The notes under the pieces were generated by a model. The model worked only from the letters and a program-made list of their open reading frames with translations. It ran no database searches and had not been told where the DNA came from. Of a stretch of 64,000 nt of DNA, positions 3,925 to 48,260 are shown in pieces (positions within the stretch are counted from its first letter, which is position 1; the number at the start of each line of letters is the position of its first letter). The DNA comes from Haliotis cracherodii (taxonomy: Eukaryota). Made by a program: the position numbers and the translations under genes. The stretch spans positions 18,600,001 through 18,664,000 of the forward strand of contig NW_027266286.1 of the NCBI RefSeq assembly GCF_022045235.1, in the 5' to 3' direction.

Positions 3925-5130
3925 GTGTGTGTATGAGTCTTCTGTGAAAGATGTGTATGTGTGAGACTTCTGTGAAAGATGTGTATGTGTGAGGCTTCTG
4001 TGAAAGATGTGTATGTGTGAGGCTTCTGTGTGTATGTGTGAGGCTTCTGTGAAAGATGTGTATGTGTGAGGCTTCTGTGTGTGATGTGTATGTGTGAGGC
4101 TTCTGTGAAAGATGTATATGTGTGAGACTTCTGTGAAAGATGTGTATGTGTGAGGCTTCTGTGTGTGATGTGTATGTGTGTGTCTTCTGTGTGTGATGTG
4201 TATGTGTGAGACTTCTGTGAAAGATGTGTATGTGTGAGGCATTCTGTGAAAGATGTGTATGTATGAGGCTTCTGTGAAAGATGTGTATGTGTGAGACTTC
4301 TGTGTGTGATGTGTATGTGTGAGGCTTCTGTGAAAGATGTGTATGTGTGAGGCTTCTGTGTGTGATGTGTATGTGTGAGGCTTCTGTGTGTGATGTGTAT
4401 GTGTGAGGCTTCTGTGAAAGATGTGTATGTGTGAGGCTTCTGTGTGTGATGTGTATGTGTGAGGCTTCTGTGTGTGATGTGTATGTGTGAGGCTTCTGTG
4501 AAAGATGTGTATGTATGAGGCTTCTGTGAAAGATGTGTATGTGTGAGACTTCTGTGAAAGATGTGTATGTGTGAGGCTTCTGTGTGTGATGTGTATGTGT
4601 GAGGCTTCTGTGTGTGATGTGTATGTGTGAGGCTTCTGTGAAAGATATGTATGTGTGTGGCTTCTGTGTGTGATGTGTATGTGTGAGGCTTCTGTGAAAG
4701 ATGTGTATGTGTGAGACTTCTGTGTGTGATGTGTGTGTGTGAGACTTCTGTGTGTAATGTGTATGTGTGTGTCTTCTGTGTGTGATGTGTATGTGTGAGA
4801 CTTCTGTGAAAGATATGTATGTGTGAGGCTTCTGTGTGTGATGTGTATGTGTGAGGCTTCTGTGTGTGATGTGTATGTGTGAGGCTTCTGTGTGTGATGT
4901 GTATGTGTGAGGCTTCTGTGTGTGATGTGTATGTGTGAGGCTTCTGTGAAAGATGTGTATATGTGAGACTTCTGTGTGTGATGTGTATGTGTGAGGCTTC
5001 TGTGAAAGATGTGTATGTGTGAAGCTTCTGTGAAAGATGCCTATGTGTGAGACTTCTGTGAAAGATGTCTGTGTGTGAGACTTCTATGTGTGATGTATAT
5101 GTGTGACACTTCTTTGTATGATGTGCATTT
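3925..5130. repeat. 28-bp minisatellite in P450 intron 1
   Basis: Unit GTGAGGCTTCTGTG(AAA/TGT)GATGTGTATGT. Confidence 0.95.
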
Positions 5131-5499
5131 GTGCTACTTCTGTGTTGTGTGAGATATGTGGGATGCACACGCGAGTTTTCTGTGTATGATGCCCGTGTAG
5201 GAGTCTTCTGTGTAACTTGTGTGTGATATATGAAGTATGCCCATGTGAGATTTCTGTGTGGGATGTCCATGTTCGAGACGTCTTTGGAGGATGTACATTT
5301 GCGGATGGTTCCGTGGAATGTCTATGTGTGTTACGCCGGTGTGTGATGTGAATGTGTATGTTGCCTTGTAGGATGCCTGTGACTTAGACGTATGTGTAGG
5401 ATGGCCATGTGTATGGTATCTTTATAGGATGGCATGTGTTGATGTCTGTGTAGAATGTCACTGAGTTAGGTTTCCGTGAAGGATGCCCATGTGTGATCT

Positions 5500-7310
5500 G
5501 TTCAGGATGGCATTTGTGAGACGTCTGTGTAGGATGCACATTGTGAGATATCTGTGTAGGATGGCATTTGTGAGACGTCTGTGTAGGATCCACATTGTCA
5601 GATGTCTGTGTAGGATGCACATTGCGAGATGTCTGTGTAGGGTGCACATTGTGAGATGTCTGTGTAGGGTGCACATTGTGAGATGTCTGTGTAGGGTGCA
5701 CATTGTGAGATGTCTGTGTAGGATGCACATTGTGAGATATCTGTGTAGGGTGCACATTGTGAGATATTTGTGTAGGATGCACATTGTGAGATGTCTTTGT
5801 AGGATGCACATTGTGAGATGTCTGTGTAGGGTGCACATTGTGAGATATCTGTGTAGGGTGCACATTGCGAGATGTCTGTGTAGGATGCACATTGTGAGAT
5901 GTCTGTGTAGGGTGCACATTGCGAGATATCTGTGTAGGGTGCACATTGTGAGATGTCTGTGTAGGGTGCACAATGCGAGATGTCTGTGTAGGGTGCACAT
6001 TGTGAGATATCTGTGTAGGGTGCACATTGCGAGATGTCTGTGTAGGGTGCACATTGTGAGATGTGTGTGTAGGATGCACATTGTGAGATGTCTGTGTAGG
6101 ATGCACATTGTGAGATGTCTGTGTAGGATCCACATTGTGAGATGTCTGTGTAGGATGCACATTGCGAGATATCTGTGTAGGATGCACATTGTGAGATGTC
6201 TGTGTAGGGTGCACATTGTGAGATATCTGTGTAGGATGCACATTGTGAGATATCTGTGTAGGGTGCACATTGCGAGATATCTGTGTAGGGTGCACATTGT
6301 GAGATATCTGTGTAGGATGCACATTGTGAGATGTCTGTGTAGGGTGCACATTGCGAGATATCTGTGTAGGATGCACATTGCGAGATATCTGTGTAGGATG
6401 CACATTGTGTGATGTCTGTGTAGGATGCACATTGTGAGATGTCTGTGTAGGATGCACATTGTGAGATATCTGTGTAGGGTGCACATTGCGAGATGTCTGT
6501 GTAGGGTGCACACATGTGATATCTGTGTAGGGTGCACATTGCGAGATGTCTGTGTAGGATGCACATTGCGAGATGTCTGTGTAGGGTGCACACATGTGAT
6601 ATCTGTGTAGGGTGCACATTGTGAGATGTCTGTGTAGGATGCACATTGTGAGATGTCTGTGTAGGGTGCACATTGCGAGATATCTGTGTAGGATGCACAT
6701 TGTGTGATGTCTGTGTAGGATGCACATTGTGAGATGTCTGTGTAGGATGCACATTGTGAGATATCTGTGTAGGGTGCACATTGCGAGATGTCTGTGTAGG
6801 GTGCACACATGTGATATCTGTGTAGGGTGCACATTGCGAGATGTCTGTGTAGGATGCACATTGCGAGATATCTGTGTAGGGTGCACACATGTGATATCTG
6901 TGTAGGGTGCACATTGTGAGATGTCTGTGTCGGGTGCACATTGCGAGATATCTGTGTAGGGTGCACATTGCGAGATGTCTGTGTCGGGTGCACATTGCGA
7001 GATATCTGTGTAGGGTGCACATTGCGAGATGTCTGTGTAGGGTGCACACATGTGATATCTGTGTAGGGTGCACATTGCGAGATGTCTGTGTAGGGTGCAC
7101 ATAGCTAGGGTGCACAAATGTGATATCTGTGTAGGGTGCACATATGTGAGATATCTGTGTGGGGTGCACAAATGTGATATGTGTGTAGGATGCACATTGT
7201 GAGATGTCTGTGTAGGATGCACATTGTAAGATGTATGTGTAGGGTGCACATATTTGATATCTGTGTAGGGTGCATATATGTGATATCAGTGTAGGGTGCA
7301 CATATGTGAT
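5500..7310. repeat. 27-bp minisatellite in P450 intron 1
   Basis: Unit GATGTCTGTGTAGG(G/A)TGCACATTG(T/C)GA. Confidence 0.95.
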
Positions 7311-8472: not shown

Positions 8473-8631
8473 GGGGCTGTGGGGTAGCCTAGTGGTTAAA
8501 GCGTTGGCTCGTCACGCCGAAGACCCAGGTTCGATTCCCGACACAGGTATACTGTATGAACCCATTTCTGGTGCACCCGCCGTGACATTGCTCGAATATT
8601 GCTAAAAGCGCCGTAAAACCATACTCACTCA
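8473..8631 (+). mobile_element. SINE family A (tRNA-Asp-like head) with TSD
   Basis: A box TAGCCTAGTGG, B box GGTTCGATTCC, GTC anticodon-like loop; TSD CTAATTATG(T/G)TATC. Confidence 0.85.
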
Positions 8632-9989: not shown

Positions 9990-11345
9990 ACTCGCCCAAC
10001 CACCTTCACACTCTCTCGCCCAACCACCTTCAAACTCATTCTCCCAACCACCTATCCATTCTCTCGACAAACCACCTTCAAACTATCTCGCCCAACCACG
10101 TTCGTTCAAGCTCTCTCGCCCAACCACCAAACTCACTCTCCGAAACACCTATCCACTCTCTCGCCCAACCACCTTCAAACTCACCCGCCCAACCACCTTC
10201 AAACTCACTCGCCCAACCACCTTCAAACTCACTCGCCCAACCACCTTCAATCTATCTCGCCCAAGCACCTTCAAACTCACTCGCCCAACCACCTTCAATC
10301 TATCTCGCCCAACCACCTTCAATCTATCTCACCAAACCACCTTCACACTCTCTCGCCCAACCACCTTCAATCTATCTCGCCCAACCACCTTCAATCTATC
10401 TCACCAAACCAGCTTCACACTCTCTCGCCCAACCACCTTCAAACTCACTCGCCAAACCACCTTTAATCTATCTCGCCCAACCACCATCAAACTCACTCGC
10501 CCAACCACCTTCAATCTATCTCGCCCAACCACCTTCACTATCACTCGCCCAAACACCTTCAAACTCACTCGCCCAACCACCTTCAATCTATCTCTCCCAA
10601 CCACCATCAATCTATCTCGCCCAACCACCTTCAAACTCACTCGCCCAACCACCTTCAATCTATCTCGCCCAACCACCTTCAATCTATCTCACCAAACCAG
10701 CTTCACACTCTCTCGCCCAACCACCTTCAAACTCACCCGCCCAACCACCTTCAAACTCACTCGCCCAACCACCTTCAATCTATCTCGCCCAACCACCTTC
10801 AATCTATCTCACCAAACCACCTTCACACTCTCTCGCCCAACCACCTTCAATCTATCTCGCCCAACCACCTTCAATCTATCTCACCAAACCAGCTTCACAC
10901 TCTCTCGCCCAACCACCTTCAAACTCACTCGCCAAACCACCTTTAATCTATCTCGCCCAACCACAATCAAACTCACTCGCCCAACCACCTTCAATCTATC
11001 TCTCCCAACCACCTTCACTATCACTCGCCCAAACACCTTCAAACTCACTCGCCCAACCACCTTCAATCTATCTCTCCCAACCACCATCAATCTATCTCGC
11101 CCAACCACCTTCAAACTCACTCGCCCAACCACCTTCAATCTATCTCGCCCAACCACCTTCAATCTATCTCACCAAACCAGCTTCACACTCTCTCGCCCAA
11201 CCACCTTCAAACTATCTCGCCCAACCACCTTCAAACTCACTCACCCAACCACCTTCAAACTATCTCGCCCAACCACCTTCAAACTATCTCGCCCAACCAC
11301 GTTCGTTCAAACCCTCTCGCCGAACCACCTTCAAACTCTCTCGCT
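9990..11345. repeat. 24-bp minisatellite with 480-bp higher-order duplication
   Basis: Unit CAACCACCTTCAAACTCACTCGCC; near-identical blocks at 10401 and 10881. Confidence 0.95.
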
Positions 11346-12086
11346 GAGGAACTTCTACACCAAATCAGAACTAGTCCTTCAACAAGCGTTTTCTTACAGC
11401 CTTCAGTGCAAGTTGAATCATATGGCAGCTATGATTGGATGATTTTGTGTAATTATGTTTTTTTAAATAAACACCCATCAAGTAATTAAAACTGACCTTG
11501 TTTTTCTATATTTAGTGCTGACTTTTTTTTAGCATGATGGCTTATGCTAAATGTGACCCTAGATATGTTCAAGCAAGTGACAAAAATGCTTGATGCGAAA
11601 ATGGGGGTGGTGTGTTCAGCTTCTTGAGTTCGAAAAAGGAGCTGGCGAAACTAGTGTACTTGTCAAATGTTTCTATTTTTATTGTTACTTTAAAGCCAGC
11701 AAGTGAACACATGTGCAAGATATAGCTGTTATTATTATGCTTGGTTAATTTATTTTTTTAAACTATAACGTTACTATATCAGTCTATGGGAAAACATTTG
11801 GTTGTGTGTAACCTCAACGACCTTCAAACTCACTCGCTTAACGACCTTCAGTAACTGAGGCGGTACCAAATCACCCAATCACGTGCAGCGATTTCCAGGC
11901 AGACTGAAACTTTAGAAGCACCCTACGATATATGTCTTGTCCCTCGCTATATGAAATGGCTGTCCAACTATACTGATCAATCATTGTCCCTATTATGTGG
12001 AGGAACTGGGAAGAGAACGGGCACTACTAAATCTAGTTACATATTTGGAAAACTAAAACATTAGCTCTATGACTCCAGTATAAACA

Positions 12087-29966: not shown

Positions 29967-31437
29967 ATTTATTACCCACGTGGTGAAGATACAGGTGGTA
30001 AGATACTAAATCCGTACGTCACACGTGTGTCGTACAAGGTTGACCTTGTTTTATTCGTTTTGATTGGATAACCGTGACCTCTGTCACACCGGGACTACTT
30101 TTTTCATTCATAAAAAATCGCGAGACGTCATTCATTTTGCGATTACAAGGCAGAACTGAAGAAATTCATGAGAACGAGAGATATTTACAAACACTTTATT
30201 AAACCAAACAAGATAGTCACACGCATCAAATTCGGTTTGCATTCAATATAAGTTATGCATAGAGCTCCTACAGACGTATAATCGAGCTAGATCTATAAAT
30301 CGATTTACAATGTACGACTGCCGATCGAGCGCGTCCCTTGAGCGTGACGCACCCGACCATTTTCGCAACTTTCAATTTGATTTAACGTAAAAGGATAAGC
30401 GTGGTGAAATGAAGTCTGTTTAAACTATCTGGACAGATATCTAGACTTACTTGCGATGATCCGGTTGTGCCATCGGTGTCCCCTTTGAAGCGTATTTTGT
30501 GGCGCTGTTTCGGTAGGTGTTGTTCATGAATGAACGAACACGACAGCACGACCAGATCACTTAAAGTTCACAGTTCCGATAAAAATCATTCGAAAACTCC
30601 GTGGAAGTGTGCCTGACTTCTGATTTTGTGGCCCCAAACATCCCAAATGTGAACAGTAACATTCCCTATCTCTAGCGTAAAATGCTGTGAGTGGATCGCG
30701 GTTGTCTTTTCTTATTACGGTGGCGACCTTGCCCTTCGATCGTTCGAAGCTGTCACTGACATGCAAGCAGACTTGAGTTTGTTGATTTTCACGTCTTCAG
30801 TGAAGGGTGGTACAGTTAACATGAATGTCTTTGGCGAACAGTCTGATTTCCCTCTTCCAAAATGGTACGGACATGATATAAATTCAGCTGATAGATCAAG
30901 GAAACCGAACCATTTTGATTGCACAGACAGGACCCCGGCAGTGTGACCGACTGTTGGTCCGATATTCAAAGCGCGGCGCTAATGTGACATTTCAAATTTT
31001 CTTATCGGTGTCCTGCGTACTAACAACATGGCGCTTGAATTGCCATAAGTTGAAGACTTTCTTCCAAAAGGATCTTGAGCGTCGGTGCTGGTTTGTTTGC
31101 AAACAGAACAGCAGGCGCATGTTGTTAATGCGTATGCATAAACATGTCAACAATGCCCATATTTGGTCATATATCAATATTCATGCGCAACCAGATTTTG
31201 CAACCGGTTTCAGTTTGGTCTGTCAACGAACGAAAGTTGTTATGTATTTACACTTAAATATATATTTAACGTGGGTAATAAATAAAATACCACACTCATT
31301 CTCGTTAGATACCATTTTTACGAAACTCGTGAACTTTCTATGGTATCTGACCTCGCTTTCGCTCGGTCAGATACCATAGAAAGTCCACTCGTTTCGTAAA
31401 AATGGTATCTAACGAGAATGAGTGTAGTATTCTCTAT
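29967..31437. mobile_element. Hairpin-terminated element, module 1 (15-bp IR pair + 146-bp hairpin); possibly non-autonomous Crypton-like
   Basis: ATTTATTACCCACGT 29967..29981 / ACGTGGGTAATAAAT 31269..31283; hairpin 31286..31431. Confidence 0.6.
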
Positions 31438-31470
31438 GTATGTTCTTGTATCAGCGTATATGTATTATGT

Positions 31471-31885
31471 TTTATCATCCAAAACTAGCTCCAACAGGAG
31501 ATATCGCTTGGATTAGATCAAGCGATATCTACACTGTAGATATCGCTGCAATGAAATTACATCACAATGCTTTGCAGACCATTGTGACGTCACCGGTTAC
31601 CATGACGTCACAATCAAATGACATCACTAATGGCACTGCTACTGAAGCTGTTAGCAGTACTTTTTACACTAAAGACACTGCTAATTGCTGTCTACAAATT
31701 GAAAAGTTGGAAGAATGATGTTGGATGATAAATAAAATCTCACCCTCGTGTCTTTTGATATCAAATATATCAACACTCGTTGATAAAAGTGGCAAAAATC
31801 CTCGGCAAGCCTCGGAATTTTCCACTTTTATCAACTCTTGTTGATATATTTGATATCAAAAGACACTCGGGTGAGATTCTCTATT
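31471..31885. mobile_element. Hairpin-terminated element, module 2 (12-bp IR pair + 143-bp hairpin)
   Basis: TTTATCATCCAA 31471..31482 / TTGGATGATAAA 31721..31732; hairpin 31736..31878; its left end recurs at 63960..64000. Confidence 0.65.
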
Positions 31886-32926
31886 TCTAATGATAATGAG
31901 ATCGAAGTATAAATATAATACTAGTTAATATAGATGTAAGCAACAACGTCAGGTTCCAGGGACACCTTTACCTCCTGCTTTACCAAGATTGAGATAGACG
32001 CCCAATCGTATGGTCTCACCTTTGCTTCATCAGAAACGACAGCAATGAATTAATGTTCTTCGAATTAACCGTTTTAGCTCATACGTTTGGTCTTATTAAG
32101 GAAAATCAACATGTTCCTTATAGCCTTGCTCCTATAACCAGAAAATTAGTAGTCCGTAGATCAGTTTGTTTGAGGAAATAATCACTTCAGACAGAAGTGG
32201 CCGCCACATCATATCATATGACTTTTGACATATCACCAAGAACAAACACTCTTCACCAGCCAATAGCAATATACGGAGCTGCCTATGCAACTACAGTACA
32301 CGGGAACTTTGCATGCTAGAAATAGCATTAAGAAGTCATGAATGATATAACAACTTTGGCCCAGAGGACAATACTCGACTCAGTGTCGAACAAAACAAAA
32401 GGAAAAGACCATAATGCATGAAATTGCATTTTGTTTTCACGTGATCGATCAAAGCGATATTCTCTTTAGGAATAGCTTAGGTTTCCTTGAAGTGTGCATT
32501 TCGACATCAGTTATGCTATTTGAAATAACCACAAGTTCGTCATTATTATCTATTGGTTGGGACATCCACAACATGGACTTTATTCGTTATGAGGACGTCA
32601 CGCTACTGTTCTTGCAGTTCATTCTGAGACAGGAGTTCACTGCCCATTCTGAACGTGCATTTGAACACGTAAAACTGTCACGTAAACTAAAGGTCATTAT
32701 ACAAAATAATAGAGAAATTAAATATCAACCAGTAGATCACTCGAATCTGTTGATTCTTTTTTCAGAATCATCAATGTCGGCACCACAGAAACAGGCGTAG
32801 CCGTTACATTCACTAATGGAGAAGTCCATCGAATTCCGGAAGTAGAATAAATTCGCCCCATTTTTCGCCCCTGATTTCTTCCTTATTGATTGTAAAGGCT
32901 GTGTCCGTTTCACTGGTGTCGAACTA

Positions 32927-43869: not shown

Positions 43870-46800
43870 CATGTAGTACAACACCCAAGTTAATTCAGTA
43901 CACAAGGTAATACAGCACGCAAGTTAATACAGTACACAAGGTAGTATAGCACATCAGGTAACAAACCATATCAAGTAACACAGCACATCAGGTAGAACAT
44001 CACACCAGGGAATATAGCACACAAGGTAATACAACACGCCAGGTAATACAACACGTCATTCAATACAACACAATGTATACAGCACACACGGTAATAAAGC
44101 ACACAAGATAATATAGTACACAAGGTAATACAGTACATCATGTAATGCAGCACACCAGGTAATACAGCACACCAGGTAATAAAGCACACCAGGTAATACA
44201 GCACACAAGGCAATACAGTACATCATGTAATGCAGCACATCAGGTAATACAGCACACCAGGTAATAAAGCACACCAGGTAATACAGCACACAAGGTAATA
44301 CAGTACATCTTGTAATGCAGCACACAAGGTAGTACAGCACACAAGATAATATAGTACACAAGGTAATACAGTACATCATGTAATGCAGCACACCAGGTAA
44401 TACAGCACACCAGGTAATAAAGCACACCAGGTAATACAGCACACCAGGTAATAAAGCACACCAGGTAATACAGCACACAAGGTAGTACAGCACACAAGGT
44501 AGTACAGCACACCAGGTAATACAGCTGATCAAGTAATACAGAGCACAAGGTAGTACAGCACACCAGGTAATACAGCATACAAGGTAATACAGGACACCAG
44601 GTAATACAGCACACAAGGTAATACAGCTGATCAGGTAATACATGTACAGCACATCATGTAATACAGCACACCAAGTCATACAGCAAACAAAGTAATACAG
44701 CACACCGGGTAAAAAAGCACAGCAGGAAATACAGCACTTTAGGTAACACAGCACATCAGGTAACACACTGCACCAGGTAATACAGCACACCAGGTAATAC
44801 AGCACACCAGATAATGATATAAGATTGTCCACCAAGTCATACAACACGCTCGTTAATACACACACTGTTTAAAAGAACACCATGTTTAAAAGAAGCCATG
44901 TAGTACAACACCCAAGTTAATTCAGTACACAAGGTAATACAGCACACAGGGTAATACAGTACACAAGGTAGTATAGCACATCAGGTAACAAACCATATCA
45001 AGTAACACAGCACATCAGGTAGAACATCACACCAGGGAATATAGCACGACTTGGTAATACAGTACACAAGGTGTATAGCACATCAGGTAACAAACCATAT
45101 CAAGTAACACAGCACATCAGGTAGAACATCACACCAGGGAATATAGCACGCTAGGTAATACAGTACACAAAGTGTATAGCACATCAGGTAACACACCATA
45201 TCAAGTAACACAGCACATCAGGTAGAACATCACACCAGGGAATATAGCACGCTAGGTAATACAGTACACAAGGTGTATAGCACATCAGGTAACAAACCAT
45301 ATCAAGTAACACAGCACATCAGGTAGAACATCACACCAGGGAATATAGCACGCTAGGTAATACAGTACACAAGGTGTATAGCACATCAGGTAACAAACCA
45401 TATCAAGTAACACAGCACATCAGGTAGAACATCACACCAGGGAATATAGCACGCTAGGTAATACAGTACACAAGGTAGTATAGCACATCAGGTAACAAAC
45501 CATATAGGGTAACACAGCACATCAGGTAGAACATCACACCAGGGAATATAGCACGCTAGGTAATACAGTACACAAGGTGTATAGCACATCAGGTAACAAA
45601 CCATATCAAGTAACACAGCACATCAGGTAGAACATCACACTAGGGAATATAGCACGCTAGGTAATACAGTACACAAGGTGTATAGCACATCAGGTAACAA
45701 ACCATATCAAGTAACACAGCACATCAGGTAGAACATCACACCAGGGAATATAGCACGCTAGGTAATACAGTACACAAGGTGTATAGCACATCAGGTAACA
45801 AACCATATAGGGTAACACAGCACATCAGGTAGAACATCACACCAGGGAATATAGCACGCAAGTTAATACAGTACACAAGGTAGTATAGCACATCAGGTAA
45901 CAAACCATATCAAGTAACACAGCACATCAGGTAGAACATCACACCAGGGAATATAGCACGCTAGGTAATACAGTACACAAGGTGTATAGCACATCAGGTA
46001 ACAAACCATATCAAGTAACACAGCACATCAGGTAGAACATCACACCAGGGAATATAGCACGCTAGGTAATACAGTACACAAGGTGTATAGCACATCAGGT
46101 AACAAACCATATCAAGTAACACAGCACATCAGGTAGAACATCACACCAGGGAATATAGCACGCTAGGTAATACAGTACACAAGGTGTATAGCACATCAGG
46201 TAACAAACCATATCAAGTAACACAGCACATCAGGTAGAACATCACACCAGGGAATATAGCACGCTAGGTAATACAGTACACAAGGTAGTATAGCACATCA
46301 GGTAACAAACCATATAGGGTAACACAGCACATCAGGTAGAACATCACACCAGGGAATATAGCACGCTAGGTAATACAGTACACAAGGTGTATAGCACATC
46401 AGGTAACAAACCATATCAAGTAACACAGCACATCAGGTAGAACATCACACCAGGGAATATAGCACGCTAGGTAATACAGTACACAAGGTGTATAGCACAT
46501 CAGGTAACAAACCATATCAAGTAACACAGCACATCAGGTAGAACATCACACCAGGGAATATAGCACGCTAGGTAATACAGTACACAAGGTGTATAGCACA
46601 TCAGGTAACAAACCATATAGGGTAACACAGCACATCAGGTAGAACATCACACCAGGGAATATAGCACGCAAGTTAATACAGTACACAAGGTAGTATAGCA
46701 CATCAGGTAACAAGCCATATCAAGTAACACAGCACATCAGGTAGAACATCACACCAGGGAATATAGCACGCTAGGTAATACAGTACACAAGGTGTATAGC

Positions 46801-48260
46801 ACATCAGGTAACAAACCATATCAAGTAACACAGCACATCAGGTAGAACATCACACCAGGGAATATAGCACGCTAGGTAATACAGTACACAAGGTGTATAG
46901 CACATCAGGTAACAAACCATATCAAGTAACACAGCACATCAGGTAGAACATCACACCAGGGAATATAGCACGCTAGGTAATACGGTACACAAGGTGTATA
47001 GCACATCAGGTAACAAACCATATCAAGTAACACAGCACATCAGGTAGAACATCACACCAGGGAATATAGCACGCTAGGTAATACAGTACACAAGGTAGTA
47101 TAGCACATCAGGTAACAAACCATATAGGGTAACACAGCACATCAGGTAGAACATCACACCAGGGAATATAGCACGCTAGGTAATACAGTACACAAGGTGT
47201 ATAGCACATCAGGTAACAAACCATATCAAGTAACACAGCACATCAGGTAGAACATCACACCAGGGAATATAGCACGCTAGGTAATACAGTACACAAGGTG
47301 TATAGCACATCAGGTAACAAACCATATCAAGTAACACAGCACATCAGGTAGAACATCACACCAGGGAATATAGCACGCTAGGTAATACAGTACACAAGGT
47401 AGTATAGCACATCAGGTAACAAACCATATAGGGTAACACAGCACATCAGGTAGAACATCACACCAGGGAATATAGCACGCTAGGTAATACAGTACACAAG
47501 GTAGTATAGCACATCAGGTAACAAACCATATAGGGTAACACAGCACATCAGGTAGAACATCACATCAGGGAATATAGCACGCTAGGTAATACAGTACACA
47601 AGGTAGTATAGCACATCAGGTAACAAACCATATCAAGTAACACAGCACATCAGGTAGAACATCACACCAGGGAATATAGCACGCTAGGTAATACAGTACA
47701 CAAGGTAGTATAGCACATCAGGTAACAAACCATATCAAGTAACACAGCACATCAGGTAGAACATCACACCAGGGAATATAGCACGCTAGGTAATACAGTA
47801 CACAAGGTGTATAGCACATCAGGTAACAAACCATATCAAGTAACACAGCACATCAGGTAGAACATCACACCAGGGAATATAGCACGCTAGGTAATACAGT
47901 ACACAAGGTGTATAGCACATCAGGTAACAAACCATATCAAGTAACACAGCACATCAGGTAGAACATCACACCAGGGAATATAGCACACAAGGTAATACAA
48001 CACATCAGGTAATACAACACGTCATTCAATACAACACACAATGTATACAGCACACAAGGTAATAAAGCGCACAAGATAATACAGTACACAAGGTACTACA
48101 GTACAGATAGATAATATTGCACAGCAGGTAGTACAGCACGCAAGGTAGTACAGCACACAAGCTAATTCAGCGCACCAGGTAATACAGCACATCACGCAAT
48201 ACAGCATATCATATAACACAGCACACCAAGTAATACATCACACCAGGCAAGACAAAACAT
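43870..48260. repeat. ~17-bp degenerate array containing a 101/102-bp higher-order repeat (~30 copies, 44940..47990)
   Basis: Monomer AGGTAATACAGCACACC; HOR period 45241 to 45342. Confidence 0.95.

What the first reader, a model, noticed from the sequence alone, without database searches (positions are those of the whole stretch)
31286..31878. Hairpins share geometry and TC/TC bubbles, resembling attC-like folded single-strand sites
Seen: hairpin 1 (31286..31431) and hairpin 2 (31736..31878) have different stem sequences, but their main mismatches are not random. CTCG faces CTCG (CTCT in one case), leaving TC/TC bubbles at +41 from the stem base in both (31327, 31777) and at the apex, +67/+66 (cc-TC-GC-TTTC-GC-TC-gg; cc-TC-GGC-AA-GCC-TC-gg). 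At +10 both carry TC, a bubble in hairpin 2 and paired in hairpin 1. Established: integron attC sites and HUH substrates are read as folded ssDNA through unpaired bases. Inference: these are strand-specific folded recognition sites, since the opposite strand would show GA/GA bubbles.
Basis: partly seen in the sequence, partly recalled or inferred. Interest (0 to 1): 0.8.

Follow-up and report, generated by a model that had tools for sequence, protein, structure and literature searches.

The report
Helentron transposon ends with coded giant hairpins
The two hairpins are the 3' end structures of two abundant, protein-less rolling-circle (Helentron/Helitron2-type) transposons, and their TC/TC bubbles sit at exactly the same places in at least six families with otherwise unrelated stems, which suggests, but does not show, a strand-specific recognition code.

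Summary

Each hairpin ends a young, high-copy, non-coding repeat:
- Element A: 29968-31437, about 1.47 kb.
- Element B: 31471-31884, 414 bp.

Both have the canonical Helitron2/Helentron (HLE2) layout:
- a 5' terminal inverted repeat;
- a matching 3' inverted repeat just before a 3' stem-loop;
- no target duplication;
- frequent head-to-tail junctions.

The stem-loop is about 140 nt, against the usual 10-20 bp. Its plan is fixed: 6-CTCG-27-CTCG-21/22-CTCG-6-CTCG-21/22-CTCG-27-CTCG-6. This plan recurs in at least four more families in this genome and in four metagenome contigs.
- Stems are 30-43% identical between families, while 20-24 of 24 CTCG positions match.
- 47 of 60 stem pairs show compensatory changes.

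The two inner bubbles never vary. The outer one is closed in family A.

The genome has intact Helentron transposase genes, but I found no autonomous partner with these ends. Bubble function is untested. Three miRNA-seq runs gave almost no reads.

attC is an analogy only. The HUH-substrate reading fits.

Other agents of this scan reported the same kind of element on other DNA of this genome.

The parts
29968..31437 (+). Element A: non-autonomous Helitron2/Helentron-type element, about 1.47 kb, with no ORF of note
   Evidence: Copies elsewhere in the genome are 96.6-99.6% identical over about 1.48 kb. The first look gave more than 1,600 candidates. ORFs are 154 aa or shorter, and there are no tandem repeats.
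29968..29980 (+). A: 5' terminal inverted repeat TTTATTACCCACG
   Evidence: It is the exact reverse complement of 31270-31282 (read). The 5' boundary comes from seven copies with unrelated left flanks.
31270..31282 (+). A: 3' subterminal inverted repeat CGTGGGTAATAAA, followed by the linker TAAAAT (31283-31288)
   Evidence: ATAAATAAAAT occurs only twice in the window, once before each hairpin, against 0.08 expected.
31289..31428 (+). Hairpin 1: ACCACA-CTCA-27-CTCG-22-CTCG-CTTTCG-CTCG-22-CTCG-27-TGAG-TGTAGT. TC/TC bubbles at 31327-28/31389-90 and 31353-54/31363-64. The outer site 31295-98/31419-22 is paired.
   Evidence: Identical in 25 of 29 sampled copies.
31429..31437 (+). A: 3' terminal motif ATTCTCTAT (element end)
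   Evidence: In 40 copies sampled without regard to their flanks, similarity stops here. 6 of the 40 are followed directly by another element's 5' end, TTAT(TACCC/CATCC).
31438..31470 (.). 33-nt spacer between A and B; belongs to neither repeat
   Evidence: B copies start at query position 22-24 of 31449-31895. A copies end at ATTCTCTAT.
31471..31884 (+). Element B: non-autonomous element of the same type, 414 bp
   Evidence: More than 3,000 candidates at first look; the scored copies are 95-97% identical over query positions 22-438. Nine copies have unrelated 5' flanks ending in TT.
31471..31483 (+). B: 5' terminal inverted repeat TTTATCATCCAAA
   Evidence: 12 of 13 bases complementary to 31720-31732 (read).
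31720..31732 (+). B: 3' subterminal inverted repeat GTTGGATGATAAA, followed by the linker TAAAAT (31733-31738)
   Evidence: (family D1).
31739..31875 (+). Hairpin 2: CTCACC-CTCG-27-CTCG-21-CTCG-GCAAGC-CTCG-20-CTCT-27-CTCG-GGTGAG. Bubbles at 31746-47/31867-68, 31777-78/31836-37 and 31802-03/31812-13. This copy has a 1-nt deletion and a G>T change relative to the family consensus.
31876..31884 (+). B: 3' terminal motif ATTCTCTAT (element end)

Best explanation
The two hairpins are the right-end (3') stem-loops of two non-autonomous rolling-circle transposons of the Helitron2/Helentron (HLE2) group.

**Shown here**
- Both are young, high-copy repeats without coding capacity.
- Each has a 5' terminal inverted repeat, a matching 3' inverted repeat directly upstream of the stem-loop, and a short 3' tail (ATTCTCTAT).
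- They insert without target duplication, next to a (T)TAT-like sequence.
- They often lie head to tail.
- The stem-loop is built to a fixed plan. Helices of 6, 27 and 21-22 bp are separated by CTCG facing CTCG. Each facing pair leaves a 2x2 TC/TC loop. The apex is a mini-hairpin, C-NNNN-G.
- The plan and the CTCG motifs are conserved across at least six families, while the helices covary.

**Inferred**
- During transposition the top strand is displaced by a Rep-helicase, and this structure folds on it.
- The fold acts as the termination and end-recognition signal, as the much shorter 3' hairpin does for the bat Helitron Helraiser.
- The CTCG motifs are direct repeats inside a palindrome. They mark the strand: unstable pyrimidine bubbles on the top strand, and potentially stacked tandem G.A pairs on the bottom strand. 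They also give the protein fixed reference points at set distances from the cleavage site.
- When the 3' end meets a 5' end, in a circle or a tandem junction, the two inverted repeats pair. The hairpin is extended by about 20 bp and the joint lies in duplex next to two bulged C's of ATTCTCTAT.
For: **Architecture**
- reading; boundaries, flanks, tandem junctions.
- It matches the published HLE2 definitions. Helitron2: 5' ATIR 0-2 bp from the end, 3' ATIR immediately upstream of the 3' hairpin (PMC3627910). Canonical HLE2: 12-16 nt TIRs, a stem-loop after the right repeat, T-T insertion (PMC11417382). HINE structure (PMC4067079).

**No target duplication**
- In L005 element A interrupts a 28-bp satellite, and the host sequence is restored exactly.

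**Copy number**
- 1,258 exact ATAAAAT-N130-160-ATTCTCTAT hits against 82 for the control.
- Hairpin-less ends: only 9.

**Geometry and motif conservation**
-. Four real hairpins among the metagenome contigs.

**Covariation**
- 94.7% of cells paired; 47 of 60 pairs changed on both sides; 0 of 500 shuffles as high; slid controls 32-43%.

**Pressure to close the bubbles**
- TC>GA flips on either arm occur in individual copies, yet every family consensus keeps the inner bubbles. About 8 of 73 unbiased H2 copies are flipped at the outer site.

**Junction fold**
- It extends through the joint: -80.5 against -64.6 kcal/mol.

**Machinery present**
- At least 23 uninterrupted ORFs of about 2,600-3,200 aa carry Helitron_like_N.
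- One of them has OTU, DUF6570, Rep, PIF1 and an AP-endonuclease domain.

**Hairpin as terminator in Helraiser**
- PMC4778049.
Against: - No autonomous element with these ends was found. Ten Rep loci of 20 kb each show no similarity to A or B and no CTCG-plan hairpin. Listed hairpin coordinates do not lie near Rep loci.
- The resident Helentron family whose 3' end I could see has a short stem-loop.
- The outer bubble is closed in the whole A family, so at least that one is not needed.
- Palindrome arms can co-evolve by templated copying, so covariation alone does not prove selection for a single-strand fold.
- The strand assignment (top strand = TC/TC) rests on the convention for HLE2 architecture and on the Helraiser model, not on data from this element.
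- The exact cleavage position is hidden by TTAT microhomology. The T-T rule is compatible but not uniquely resolved.
Confidence: 0.62

Rival explanations
1. The CTCG motifs are read in duplex DNA, not in a fold. Six direct repeats of (A/C)CTCG, spaced 31, 25-26, 10, 25-26 and 31 bp apart, would act like iterons for the transposase or a host factor. The palindrome would matter for another reason, or only as scaffold.
For: All six motifs point the same way on one strand, in every family. Spacings of 10 and 31 bp are close to whole helical turns. Rep proteins of geminiviruses and rolling-circle plasmids bind direct repeats next to their origin hairpin (general knowledge).
Against: It does not explain why 47 of 60 stem pairs keep complementarity through double changes. 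It also does not explain why the motifs always face each other in the fold. The two readings are not exclusive.
Confidence: 0.13
2. The long hairpin is a single-strand origin: it primes complementary-strand synthesis on the excised single-stranded circle. This would resemble the orientation-specific sso hairpins, roughly 130-300 nt, of rolling-circle plasmids.
For: Its size, imperfection and strand specificity resemble ssoA-type origins (general knowledge). Helraiser makes circular intermediates (PMC4778049). The structure is far longer than a terminator seems to need.
Against: There is no evidence that eukaryotic Helitron circles need a dedicated origin. The position directly after the 3' inverted repeat is the canonical terminator position. 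The junction fold places the joint inside the stem, which points to end recognition.
Confidence: 0.1
3. The hairpins have no function of their own. A common ancestral hairpin happened to have these mismatches. The arms stay complementary through templated repair, and the CTCG sites are frozen accidents.
For: Arm-to-arm conversion clearly occurs (TC>GA flips and an inverted inner segment in L043). All families share flanking motifs and so probably share an ancestor.
Against: Stems have diverged to 30-43% identity, while 20-24 of 24 motif positions and all segment lengths are unchanged. Conversion should erase the bubbles, yet every family consensus keeps the inner two. Hairpin-less copies are rare deletion products.
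Confidence: 0.08
4. The hairpins are transcribed and processed into miRNA, siRNA or hairpin RNA that regulates the element or host genes.
For: The stems are long and near-perfect, and thousands of copies would be read through by host transcription. One run of uncertain type holds contigs over the region.
Against: Three miRNA-seq runs were laid on 31260-31900, about 57 million reads in all, from a species label whose DNA run holds the elements. They gave 0, 1 and 0 reads. Caveat: the organism's presence in those runs was not shown on another stretch. No Rfam family matches. The model also does not explain the conserved position at the transposon end.
Confidence: 0.04
5. They are foldback elements or MITEs of a cut-and-paste (DDE) transposon that inserted next to other repeats.
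For: Long inverted repeats and high copy number.
Against: The hairpin is always at one end of a larger unit with asymmetric inverted repeats. There is no target duplication. The same linker and tail flank different hairpins. Head-to-tail junctions are precise.
Confidence: 0.03

Closest known systems
Helitron2 / Helentron (HLE2) non-autonomous elements (HINE, DINE-1-like)
   Same: A 5' inverted repeat at the end; a 3' inverted repeat immediately upstream of a 3' stem-loop; T-rich ends; no target duplication; high copy number; no coding capacity; tandem copies. The genome encodes intact Helentron Rep-helicase-endonuclease proteins.
   Different: The stem-loop is about 140 nt (arms 67-70 nt), against stems of 5-10 bp or about 20-30 bp in total in the descriptions I read. 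It follows a fixed plan with CTCG/CTCG bubbles that none of the papers I read describes. No autonomous partner was identified.
Helraiser / canonical Helitron (HLE1) 3' hairpin
   Same: A hairpin a few bases upstream of the 3' end that works as transposition terminator for a HUH Rep-helicase. The stem sequence is exchangeable as long as it pairs (PMC4778049).
   Different: HLE1 has 5' TC and 3' CTRR ends, A-T insertion, no inverted repeats and a 19-bp palindrome. Here there are inverted repeats, a T-rich target and a sevenfold longer, interrupted hairpin.
IS200/IS605 (IS608) subterminal imperfect palindromes
   Same: Ends recognised by a HUH enzyme as folded single strands, with strand specificity from unpaired bases. 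Here the 3' flank (N-T-A-T) is complementary to ATAA in the 3' inverted repeat, which recalls the guide-tetranucleotide pairing of IS608.
   Different: IS608 is bacterial, with short hairpins at both ends and a Y1 transposase without helicase. The guide-like pairing here is only an inference from flank statistics.
Integron attC sites
   Same: Imperfect palindromes of similar length, read as folded single strands. Sequence is free but geometry is fixed, and unpaired bases choose the strand.
   Different: attC is a substrate of a tyrosine recombinase in bacteria, with R/L boxes and single extrahelical bases. These are ends of a eukaryotic interspersed repeat with symmetric 2x2 bubbles. They are not members.
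Single-strand origins (ssoA) of rolling-circle plasmids
   Same: Long, imperfect, orientation-specific hairpins on the displaced strand of a rolling-circle replicon.
   Different: sso elements recruit RNA polymerase for priming in bacteria. No such role is known for eukaryotic Helitrons.

Membership tests
Helitron2/Helentron (HLE2), non-autonomous | Short (8-18 nt) inverted repeats: the 5' one 0-2 nt from the 5' end, the 3' one subterminal | tested here: met
   A: TTTATTACCCACG / CGTGGGTAATAAA, 13 of 13. B: TTTATCATCCAAA / GTTGGATGATAAA, 12 of 13. Definitions.
Helitron2/Helentron (HLE2), non-autonomous | [quoted passage not shown] | tested here: met
   The hairpin starts 6 nt after the 3' repeat and ends 9 nt before the element end. 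It is far longer than described examples.
Helitron2/Helentron (HLE2), non-autonomous | Insertion without target-site duplication, between T and T | tested here: inconclusive
   No duplication: in L005 the 28-bp satellite host is restored exactly. 5' flanks end in T/TT. 3' flanks read N-T(36/40)-A(24/40)-T(27/40). The cut position is ambiguous within TTAT, so T|T is compatible but not uniquely shown.
Helitron2/Helentron (HLE2), non-autonomous | 5' hairpin involving the 5' inverted repeat (Helitron2 feature) | tested here: inconclusive
   A: TTACCCAC...GTGGTAA can pair, but the fold is weak (-3.9 kcal/mol, z -1.2). B: ATCATCCAA...TTGGATTAGAT can pair, but the minimum-energy fold uses another 12-bp stem.
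Helitron2/Helentron (HLE2), non-autonomous | Autonomous partner encoding Rep-helicase (with or without endonuclease) with the same termini | tested here: not met
   Intact Helentron ORFs exist. However, 10 loci of 20 kb show no similarity to A or B, no ATTCTCTAT-type end and no CTCG-plan hairpin.
Helitron2/Helentron (HLE2), non-autonomous | Head-to-tail tandem copies, typical of rolling-circle elements | tested here: met
   6 of 40 sampled copies are followed immediately by a 5' end (A-A, A-B, B-B). L007 has the junction ATTCTCTAT|TTATTACCC.
Integron attC | Bacterial integron context with an IntI integrase, R''/L''-L'/R' boxes and single extrahelical bases | tested here: not met
   This is a 1.18-Gb eukaryotic genome. 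The sites are ends of an interspersed repeat with thousands of copies. The unpaired bases are symmetric TC/TC loops. IntI was not searched for.
MITE / foldback element of a DDE transposon | Symmetric terminal inverted repeats flanked by a target-site duplication | tested here: not met
   Asymmetric architecture and no duplication at the L005 empty site. The hairpin lies at one end only.
miRNA / hairpin-RNA locus | Small RNAs mapping to the arms | tested here: inconclusive
   0, 1 and 0 reads in three miRNA-seq runs. The presence of the organism in those runs was not verified. No Rfam match.

The most novel reading that the evidence does not exclude
The CTCG-opposite-CTCG bubbles, at fixed distances (31 and 25-26 nt apart) along a 70-bp hairpin, together with the bulged C's of the ATTCTCTAT tail, form a structural code. 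With it a Helentron Rep-helicase would tell the transferred strand from its complement and measure where to cut and join. The 3' inverted repeat would also pair with the target or the 5' end as a guide. This would be a eukaryotic counterpart of attC and IS608 single-strand recognition, and the first concrete model for how HLE2 ends are recognised.
Probability: 0.35. Interest if true: 0.75.

Novelty: new variant of a known kind. Interest (0 to 1): 0.6.

Why it matters
The papers I read infer, but do not test, how Helitron2/Helentron transposases recognise their ends. Only the bat Helitron Helraiser (HLE1) has been studied experimentally among them, and its hairpin is short and featureless. Here nature supplies a comparative series: at least six families in which everything in a 140-nt end structure has changed except its geometry and six CTCG motifs.

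That gives specific mutants to make:
- close one bubble;
- flip a motif;
- shift the spacing;
- swap the strand.

It also gives a clear prediction of strand asymmetry. In addition it explains the role of the terminal inverted repeats, which extend the hairpin across the 3'/5' joint. The finding also matters for annotation, because tools that expect short 3' stem-loops will misplace these element ends.

Tried and rejected
1. **Rfam scan of the window.** Only one tRNA-like hit elsewhere, nothing on the hairpins.
2. **Autonomous partner.**
   - PF14214 search of the genome.
   - Ten Rep loci fetched.
   - Scans for end motifs, CTCG geometry, blastn similarity and long palindromes.
   - No partner found. 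The visible 3' end of one Helentron family has a short stem-loop after (AAT)n.
3. **A 143-nt hairpin in the C2/C80 Helentron stack.** It shares only the outer register (6-CTCA-27). It has no TC/TC bubbles and is absent from a 97% identical copy. It is suggestive, but no link is established.
4. **Hairpins as independent insertions into A and B.** Rejected: only 9 hairpin-less ends against 1,258, and the one shown is a deletion between ATTCTC repeats.
5. **Small-RNA source.** Essentially no reads, with the caveat given above.
6. **Metagenome scan.** 14 of 18 hits are GC-rich CTCG microsatellites, not hairpins. The 664-aa ORF beside one real hit is a reverse transcriptase, not a Rep.
7. **Coding capacity and tandem repeats inside A and B.** None.
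8. **Organism.** Names are coded in the reads tool. 'Abalone' comes only from another agent's note and was not verified here.
Full report
**1. The observation**

Reading 30800-32400 and the repeat finder confirm two long imperfect palindromes.
- Hairpin 1: arms 31286-31352 and 31365-31431, 67 nt, 94% complementary.
- Hairpin 2: arms 31727-31796 and 31818-31887, 70 nt, 86% complementary.

| Hairpin | RNA fold, kcal/mol (z) | DNA fold + strand, kcal/mol (z) | DNA fold - strand, kcal/mol |
|---|---|---|---|
| 1 | -102.6 (-19) | -64.6 (-22) | -69.1 |
| 2 | -87.8 (-18) | -53.8 (-17) | -55.0 |

The RNA values come, the DNA values. No shuffle does as well.

The mismatches arise because CTCG faces CTCG: C-G, T.C, C.T, G-C. 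The CTCT at 31835-38 is private to this copy; the family consensus is CTCG.

**2. What the hairpins belong to**

The window is part of a 1.18-Gb, 80-contig eukaryotic genome. Each hairpin is the 3' end of an interspersed repeat.
- Hairpin 1 with its flanks has more than 1,600 first-look candidates. The scored copies are 99-100% identical.
- The unit it ends is about 1.48 kb, 96.6-99.6% identical between loci.
- The stretch 31449-31895 has more than 3,000 candidates. The scored copies are 95-97% identical over positions 22-438.

This defines element A (29968-31437) and element B (31471-31884), separated by 33 nt. Neither has coding capacity or tandem repeats.

Both show the same layout.
- A 5' end TTTAT plus about 8 variable bases. 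It is the inverted repeat of the stretch just before the hairpin (A: TTTATTACCCACG / CGTGGGTAATAAA; B: TTTATCATCCAAA / GTTGGATGATAAA).
- The linker TAAAAT.
- The hairpin.
- The tail ATTCTCTAT.

ATAAATAAAAT occurs only at these two places in the window, against 0.08 expected. The pattern ATAAAAT-N130-160-ATTCTCTAT has 1,258 genome hits against 82 for the control. Ends without a hairpin are rare: 9 hits, and the one shown is a deletion.

**3. Comparison with known kinds**

The layout is the published definition of Helitron2/Helentron (HLE2) elements.
- 5' ATIR 0-2 bp from the end; 3' ATIR immediately upstream of the 3' hairpin (PMC3627910).
- subTIRs plus a 3' palindrome, a TT preference and a variable number of Ts at the ends (PMC4067079; oyster HINEs, PMC7492417).

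Further rolling-circle hallmarks are present.
- In a sample of 40 copies chosen without regard to flanks, 6 are followed immediately by another element's 5' end (A-A, A-B, B-B). L007 shows the junction ATTCTCTAT|TTATTACCC.
- In L005, element A sits in a 28-bp satellite and the host sequence is restored exactly, so there is no target duplication.

The flanks are T or TT on the left and N-T(36/40)-A(24/40)-T(27/40) on the right. Element and target share TTAT, so the exact cut is ambiguous. T|T is compatible but not uniquely shown.

The genome carries the matching machinery.
- At least 23 uninterrupted ORFs of about 2,600-3,200 aa contain Helitron_like_N.
- One of them contains OTU, DUF6570 (the HLE2 marker), Rep, PIF1 helicase and an AP-endonuclease domain.

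**4. What is unusual: size and a fixed plan**

Described HLE2 stem-loops are short (stems of 5-10 bp in mite HINEs; 3' ATIR only 20-30 bp from the end). Here the structure is about 140 nt.

Parsing the family consensuses gives:

| Family | Segments, 5' to 3' |
|---|---|
| H1 (A) | 6-CTCA-27-CTCG-22-CTCG-CTTTCG-CTCG-22-CTCG-27-TGAG-6 |
| H2 (B) | 6-CTCG-27-CTCG-21-CTCG-GCAAGC-CTCG-21-CTCG-27-CTCG-6 |

Pattern searches built on this plan found more families in the same genome.
- CTCGV-N20-21-CTCG-N6-CTCG-N20-22-CTCG was run.
- CTCGV-N26-CTCG-N21-22-CTCG-N6-CTCG gave 49 hits against 0 for the control.
- F4 (many copies) and F3 were read in full. Both follow exactly 6-4-27-4-21-4-6-4-21-4-27(26)-4-6, with CTCG at all six sites.
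- F5 has an H1-like inner part with an open outer CTCG. F6 has different stems. For both, only the 5' arm was visible.

A scan of metagenome contigs with all six CTCG motifs gave 18 loci.
- Four are real hairpins: L091 is H1-like with an open outer bubble; L092, L095 and L098 are F4-like with a different 3' inverted repeat.
- The other 14 are CTCG microsatellites.

**5. Covariation against invariance**

Between H1, H2, F4 and F3 the helices are 30-43% identical, while 20-24 of the 24 motif positions are identical. Within young families the 27-bp helix is 27 of 27 Watson-Crick.

On a six-sequence alignment (A3), with the bubbles and an ambiguous 4-column stretch left unpaired:
- 94.7% of cells form standard pairs, against 65.7% after shuffling and 32-43% in the slid controls.
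- 47 of 60 pairs have changes on both sides, against 23.9 after shuffling.
- 0 of 500 shuffles reach the observed value on any measure.

The invariant columns are essentially the CTCG motifs and the terminal motifs.

Caveat: palindrome arms can be homogenised by templated copying, so covariation alone is not proof of selection on a fold. That same process should erase the bubbles, and it visibly does so in single copies.
- TC>GA flips occur on the 5' arm (L063, L070-74) or on the 3' arm (L062, L077). They sit on different sequence backgrounds.
- There are closures at the middle site (L075, L076).
- L043 carries an inversion of the whole inner segment.
- In the unbiased list I counted by hand 73 H2 copies. 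At the outer 5' site, 50 are intact, 8 flipped, 10 CpG-decayed and 5 other.

Every family consensus nevertheless keeps the two inner bubbles. The outer one is closed in the whole, very young A family and so is dispensable.

**6. Strand asymmetry and the joint**

The six CTCG motifs are direct repeats inside an inverted-repeat structure. The top strand therefore folds with TC/TC loops and the bottom strand with CGAG/CGAG. Here the top strand is the one with the 5' repeat on the left and the hairpin on the right, the conventional HLE2 orientation. From general nucleic-acid knowledge, tandem G.A in a Y-GA-R context can stack as sheared pairs, whereas T.C mismatches are among the least stable. The energy model used here does not capture this. 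It still puts the minus strand slightly lower, because the two A.C mismatches of H1 become G.T.

At a head-to-tail junction the fold runs on through the joint. The 3' repeat ACGTGGGTAATAAATAAAAT pairs with ATT(C)T(C)TAT|TTATTACCCACGT. This leaves two bulged C's and gives -80.5 kcal/mol, against -64.6 for the hairpin alone. F4-like elements show the same with a TC bulge (ATTC-TC-TAATTATTCAAC). A circle junction would therefore place the 3'/5' joint in duplex at a fixed distance from the bubbles.

The right flank of solo copies (N-T-A-T) is complementary to the ATAA of the 3' repeat. That recalls guide pairing in IS608, but it may simply be a target preference.

**7. Mechanism proposed**

Shown: the identity as an HLE2-type end, the plan, its conservation and the junction fold.

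Inferred by analogy with Helraiser: there the 3' hairpin is the terminator, and its stem can be exchanged if pairing is kept (PMC4778049). On that model the displaced top strand folds, and the Rep-helicase recognises the fold. The bubbles and bulges give strand identity and register for cleavage and joining.

Rivals are the following.
- Duplex 'iteron' reading of the direct CTCG repeats.
- A single-strand origin for second-strand synthesis.
- A frozen accident.
- A small-RNA source.
- A DDE foldback element.

**8. Weak points**

- I found no autonomous element with these ends.
- The one Helentron family whose 3' end I could see ends in (AAT)n plus a short stem-loop, in a stack of nested units.
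- A subfamily (C2/C80) carries a 143-nt hairpin in that (AAT)n tract, with the same outer register (6-CTCA-27). It has no bubbles and is absent from a 97% identical copy.
- The small-RNA test gave 0, 1 and 0 reads in about 57 million. It lacks a positive control for the organism.
- Near-identical sequence is held by runs under four coded species labels in 10 studies.

**9. Relation to earlier notes of this scan**

Other agents reported on other pieces of this genome:
- 'Helentron-type transposons with G.A-studded hairpin', with CGAG-opposite-CGAG blocks (s1-826189);
- a non-autonomous Helentron with a giant end hairpin whose circular form closes a longer hairpin (s1-826206).

My analysis reaches the same class independently on this window. 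It adds the exact plan, four further families, the metagenome relatives, covariation counts and flip statistics. The name 'abalone' for the genome comes from those notes and was not checked.

**10. Verdict**

- It is a new variant of a known kind.

Noticed in passing
L043 (G000:C1:20796291-20796566): One copy of hairpin 1 has the whole inner segment between the two middle bubbles replaced by its reverse complement (CGAG...CGAGCGAAAGCGAG...). This is an inversion of the hairpin tip, consistent with template switching within the palindrome.
   Followed up: partly
G000:C2:35784516-35784658 and G000:C80:18487062-18487204 (in L031/L023): A 143-nt hairpin (ATACTA-CTCA-27-TCAT...) sits inside the (AAT)n tract of a Helentron-derived unit downstream of a 2,800-aa Rep-helicase ORF. 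It is precisely absent from a 97% identical copy on C56. It looks like a mobile or deletable hairpin module.
   Followed up: partly
G000:C12:70242000-70262213 (L019, L029, L037): The region around an intact Helentron ORF has more than 10 tandem copies of an approximately 287-bp repeat upstream. Downstream there are three successive units, each ending in ...AAAATCGGCGGAAT(AAT)n plus a short stem-loop AGGGCTCTACAGCC-TTTC-GGCTTGGAGCCCT. This is a stack of nested or tandem Helentron ends.
   Followed up: partly
L018:4419-4593; L036 (C23:19537876-19538052); L019:4495-4762: Long palindromes (179-288 nt, 75-90% self-complementary) lie immediately upstream of, or overlap, the start of several Helentron Rep-helicase ORFs.
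   Followed up: no
window 8478-8546 (+): A tRNA-like match just over the Rfam gathering score (31.2 against 29 bits).
   Followed up: no
window 4001-6000, 10001-12000, 44001-48000: Strong strand-composition anomalies: GC skew +0.55 and -0.62, AT skew +0.43. They suggest skewed simple or tandem repeats.
   Followed up: no
L098:2306-4300 (-), metagenome contig Ga0256844_10001290: A 664-aa reverse-transcriptase ORF lies about 300 nt upstream of an F4-like hairpin in a metagenome contig. It is probably a neighbouring retroelement in a related animal genome.
   Followed up: partly
copies (e.g. L011, L012, L014, L054): Many changes within the CTCG motifs of old copies are CTCG>CTTG or CTCA, the signature of methylated-CpG decay. 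This suggests these elements are methylated in the germ line.
   Followed up: no
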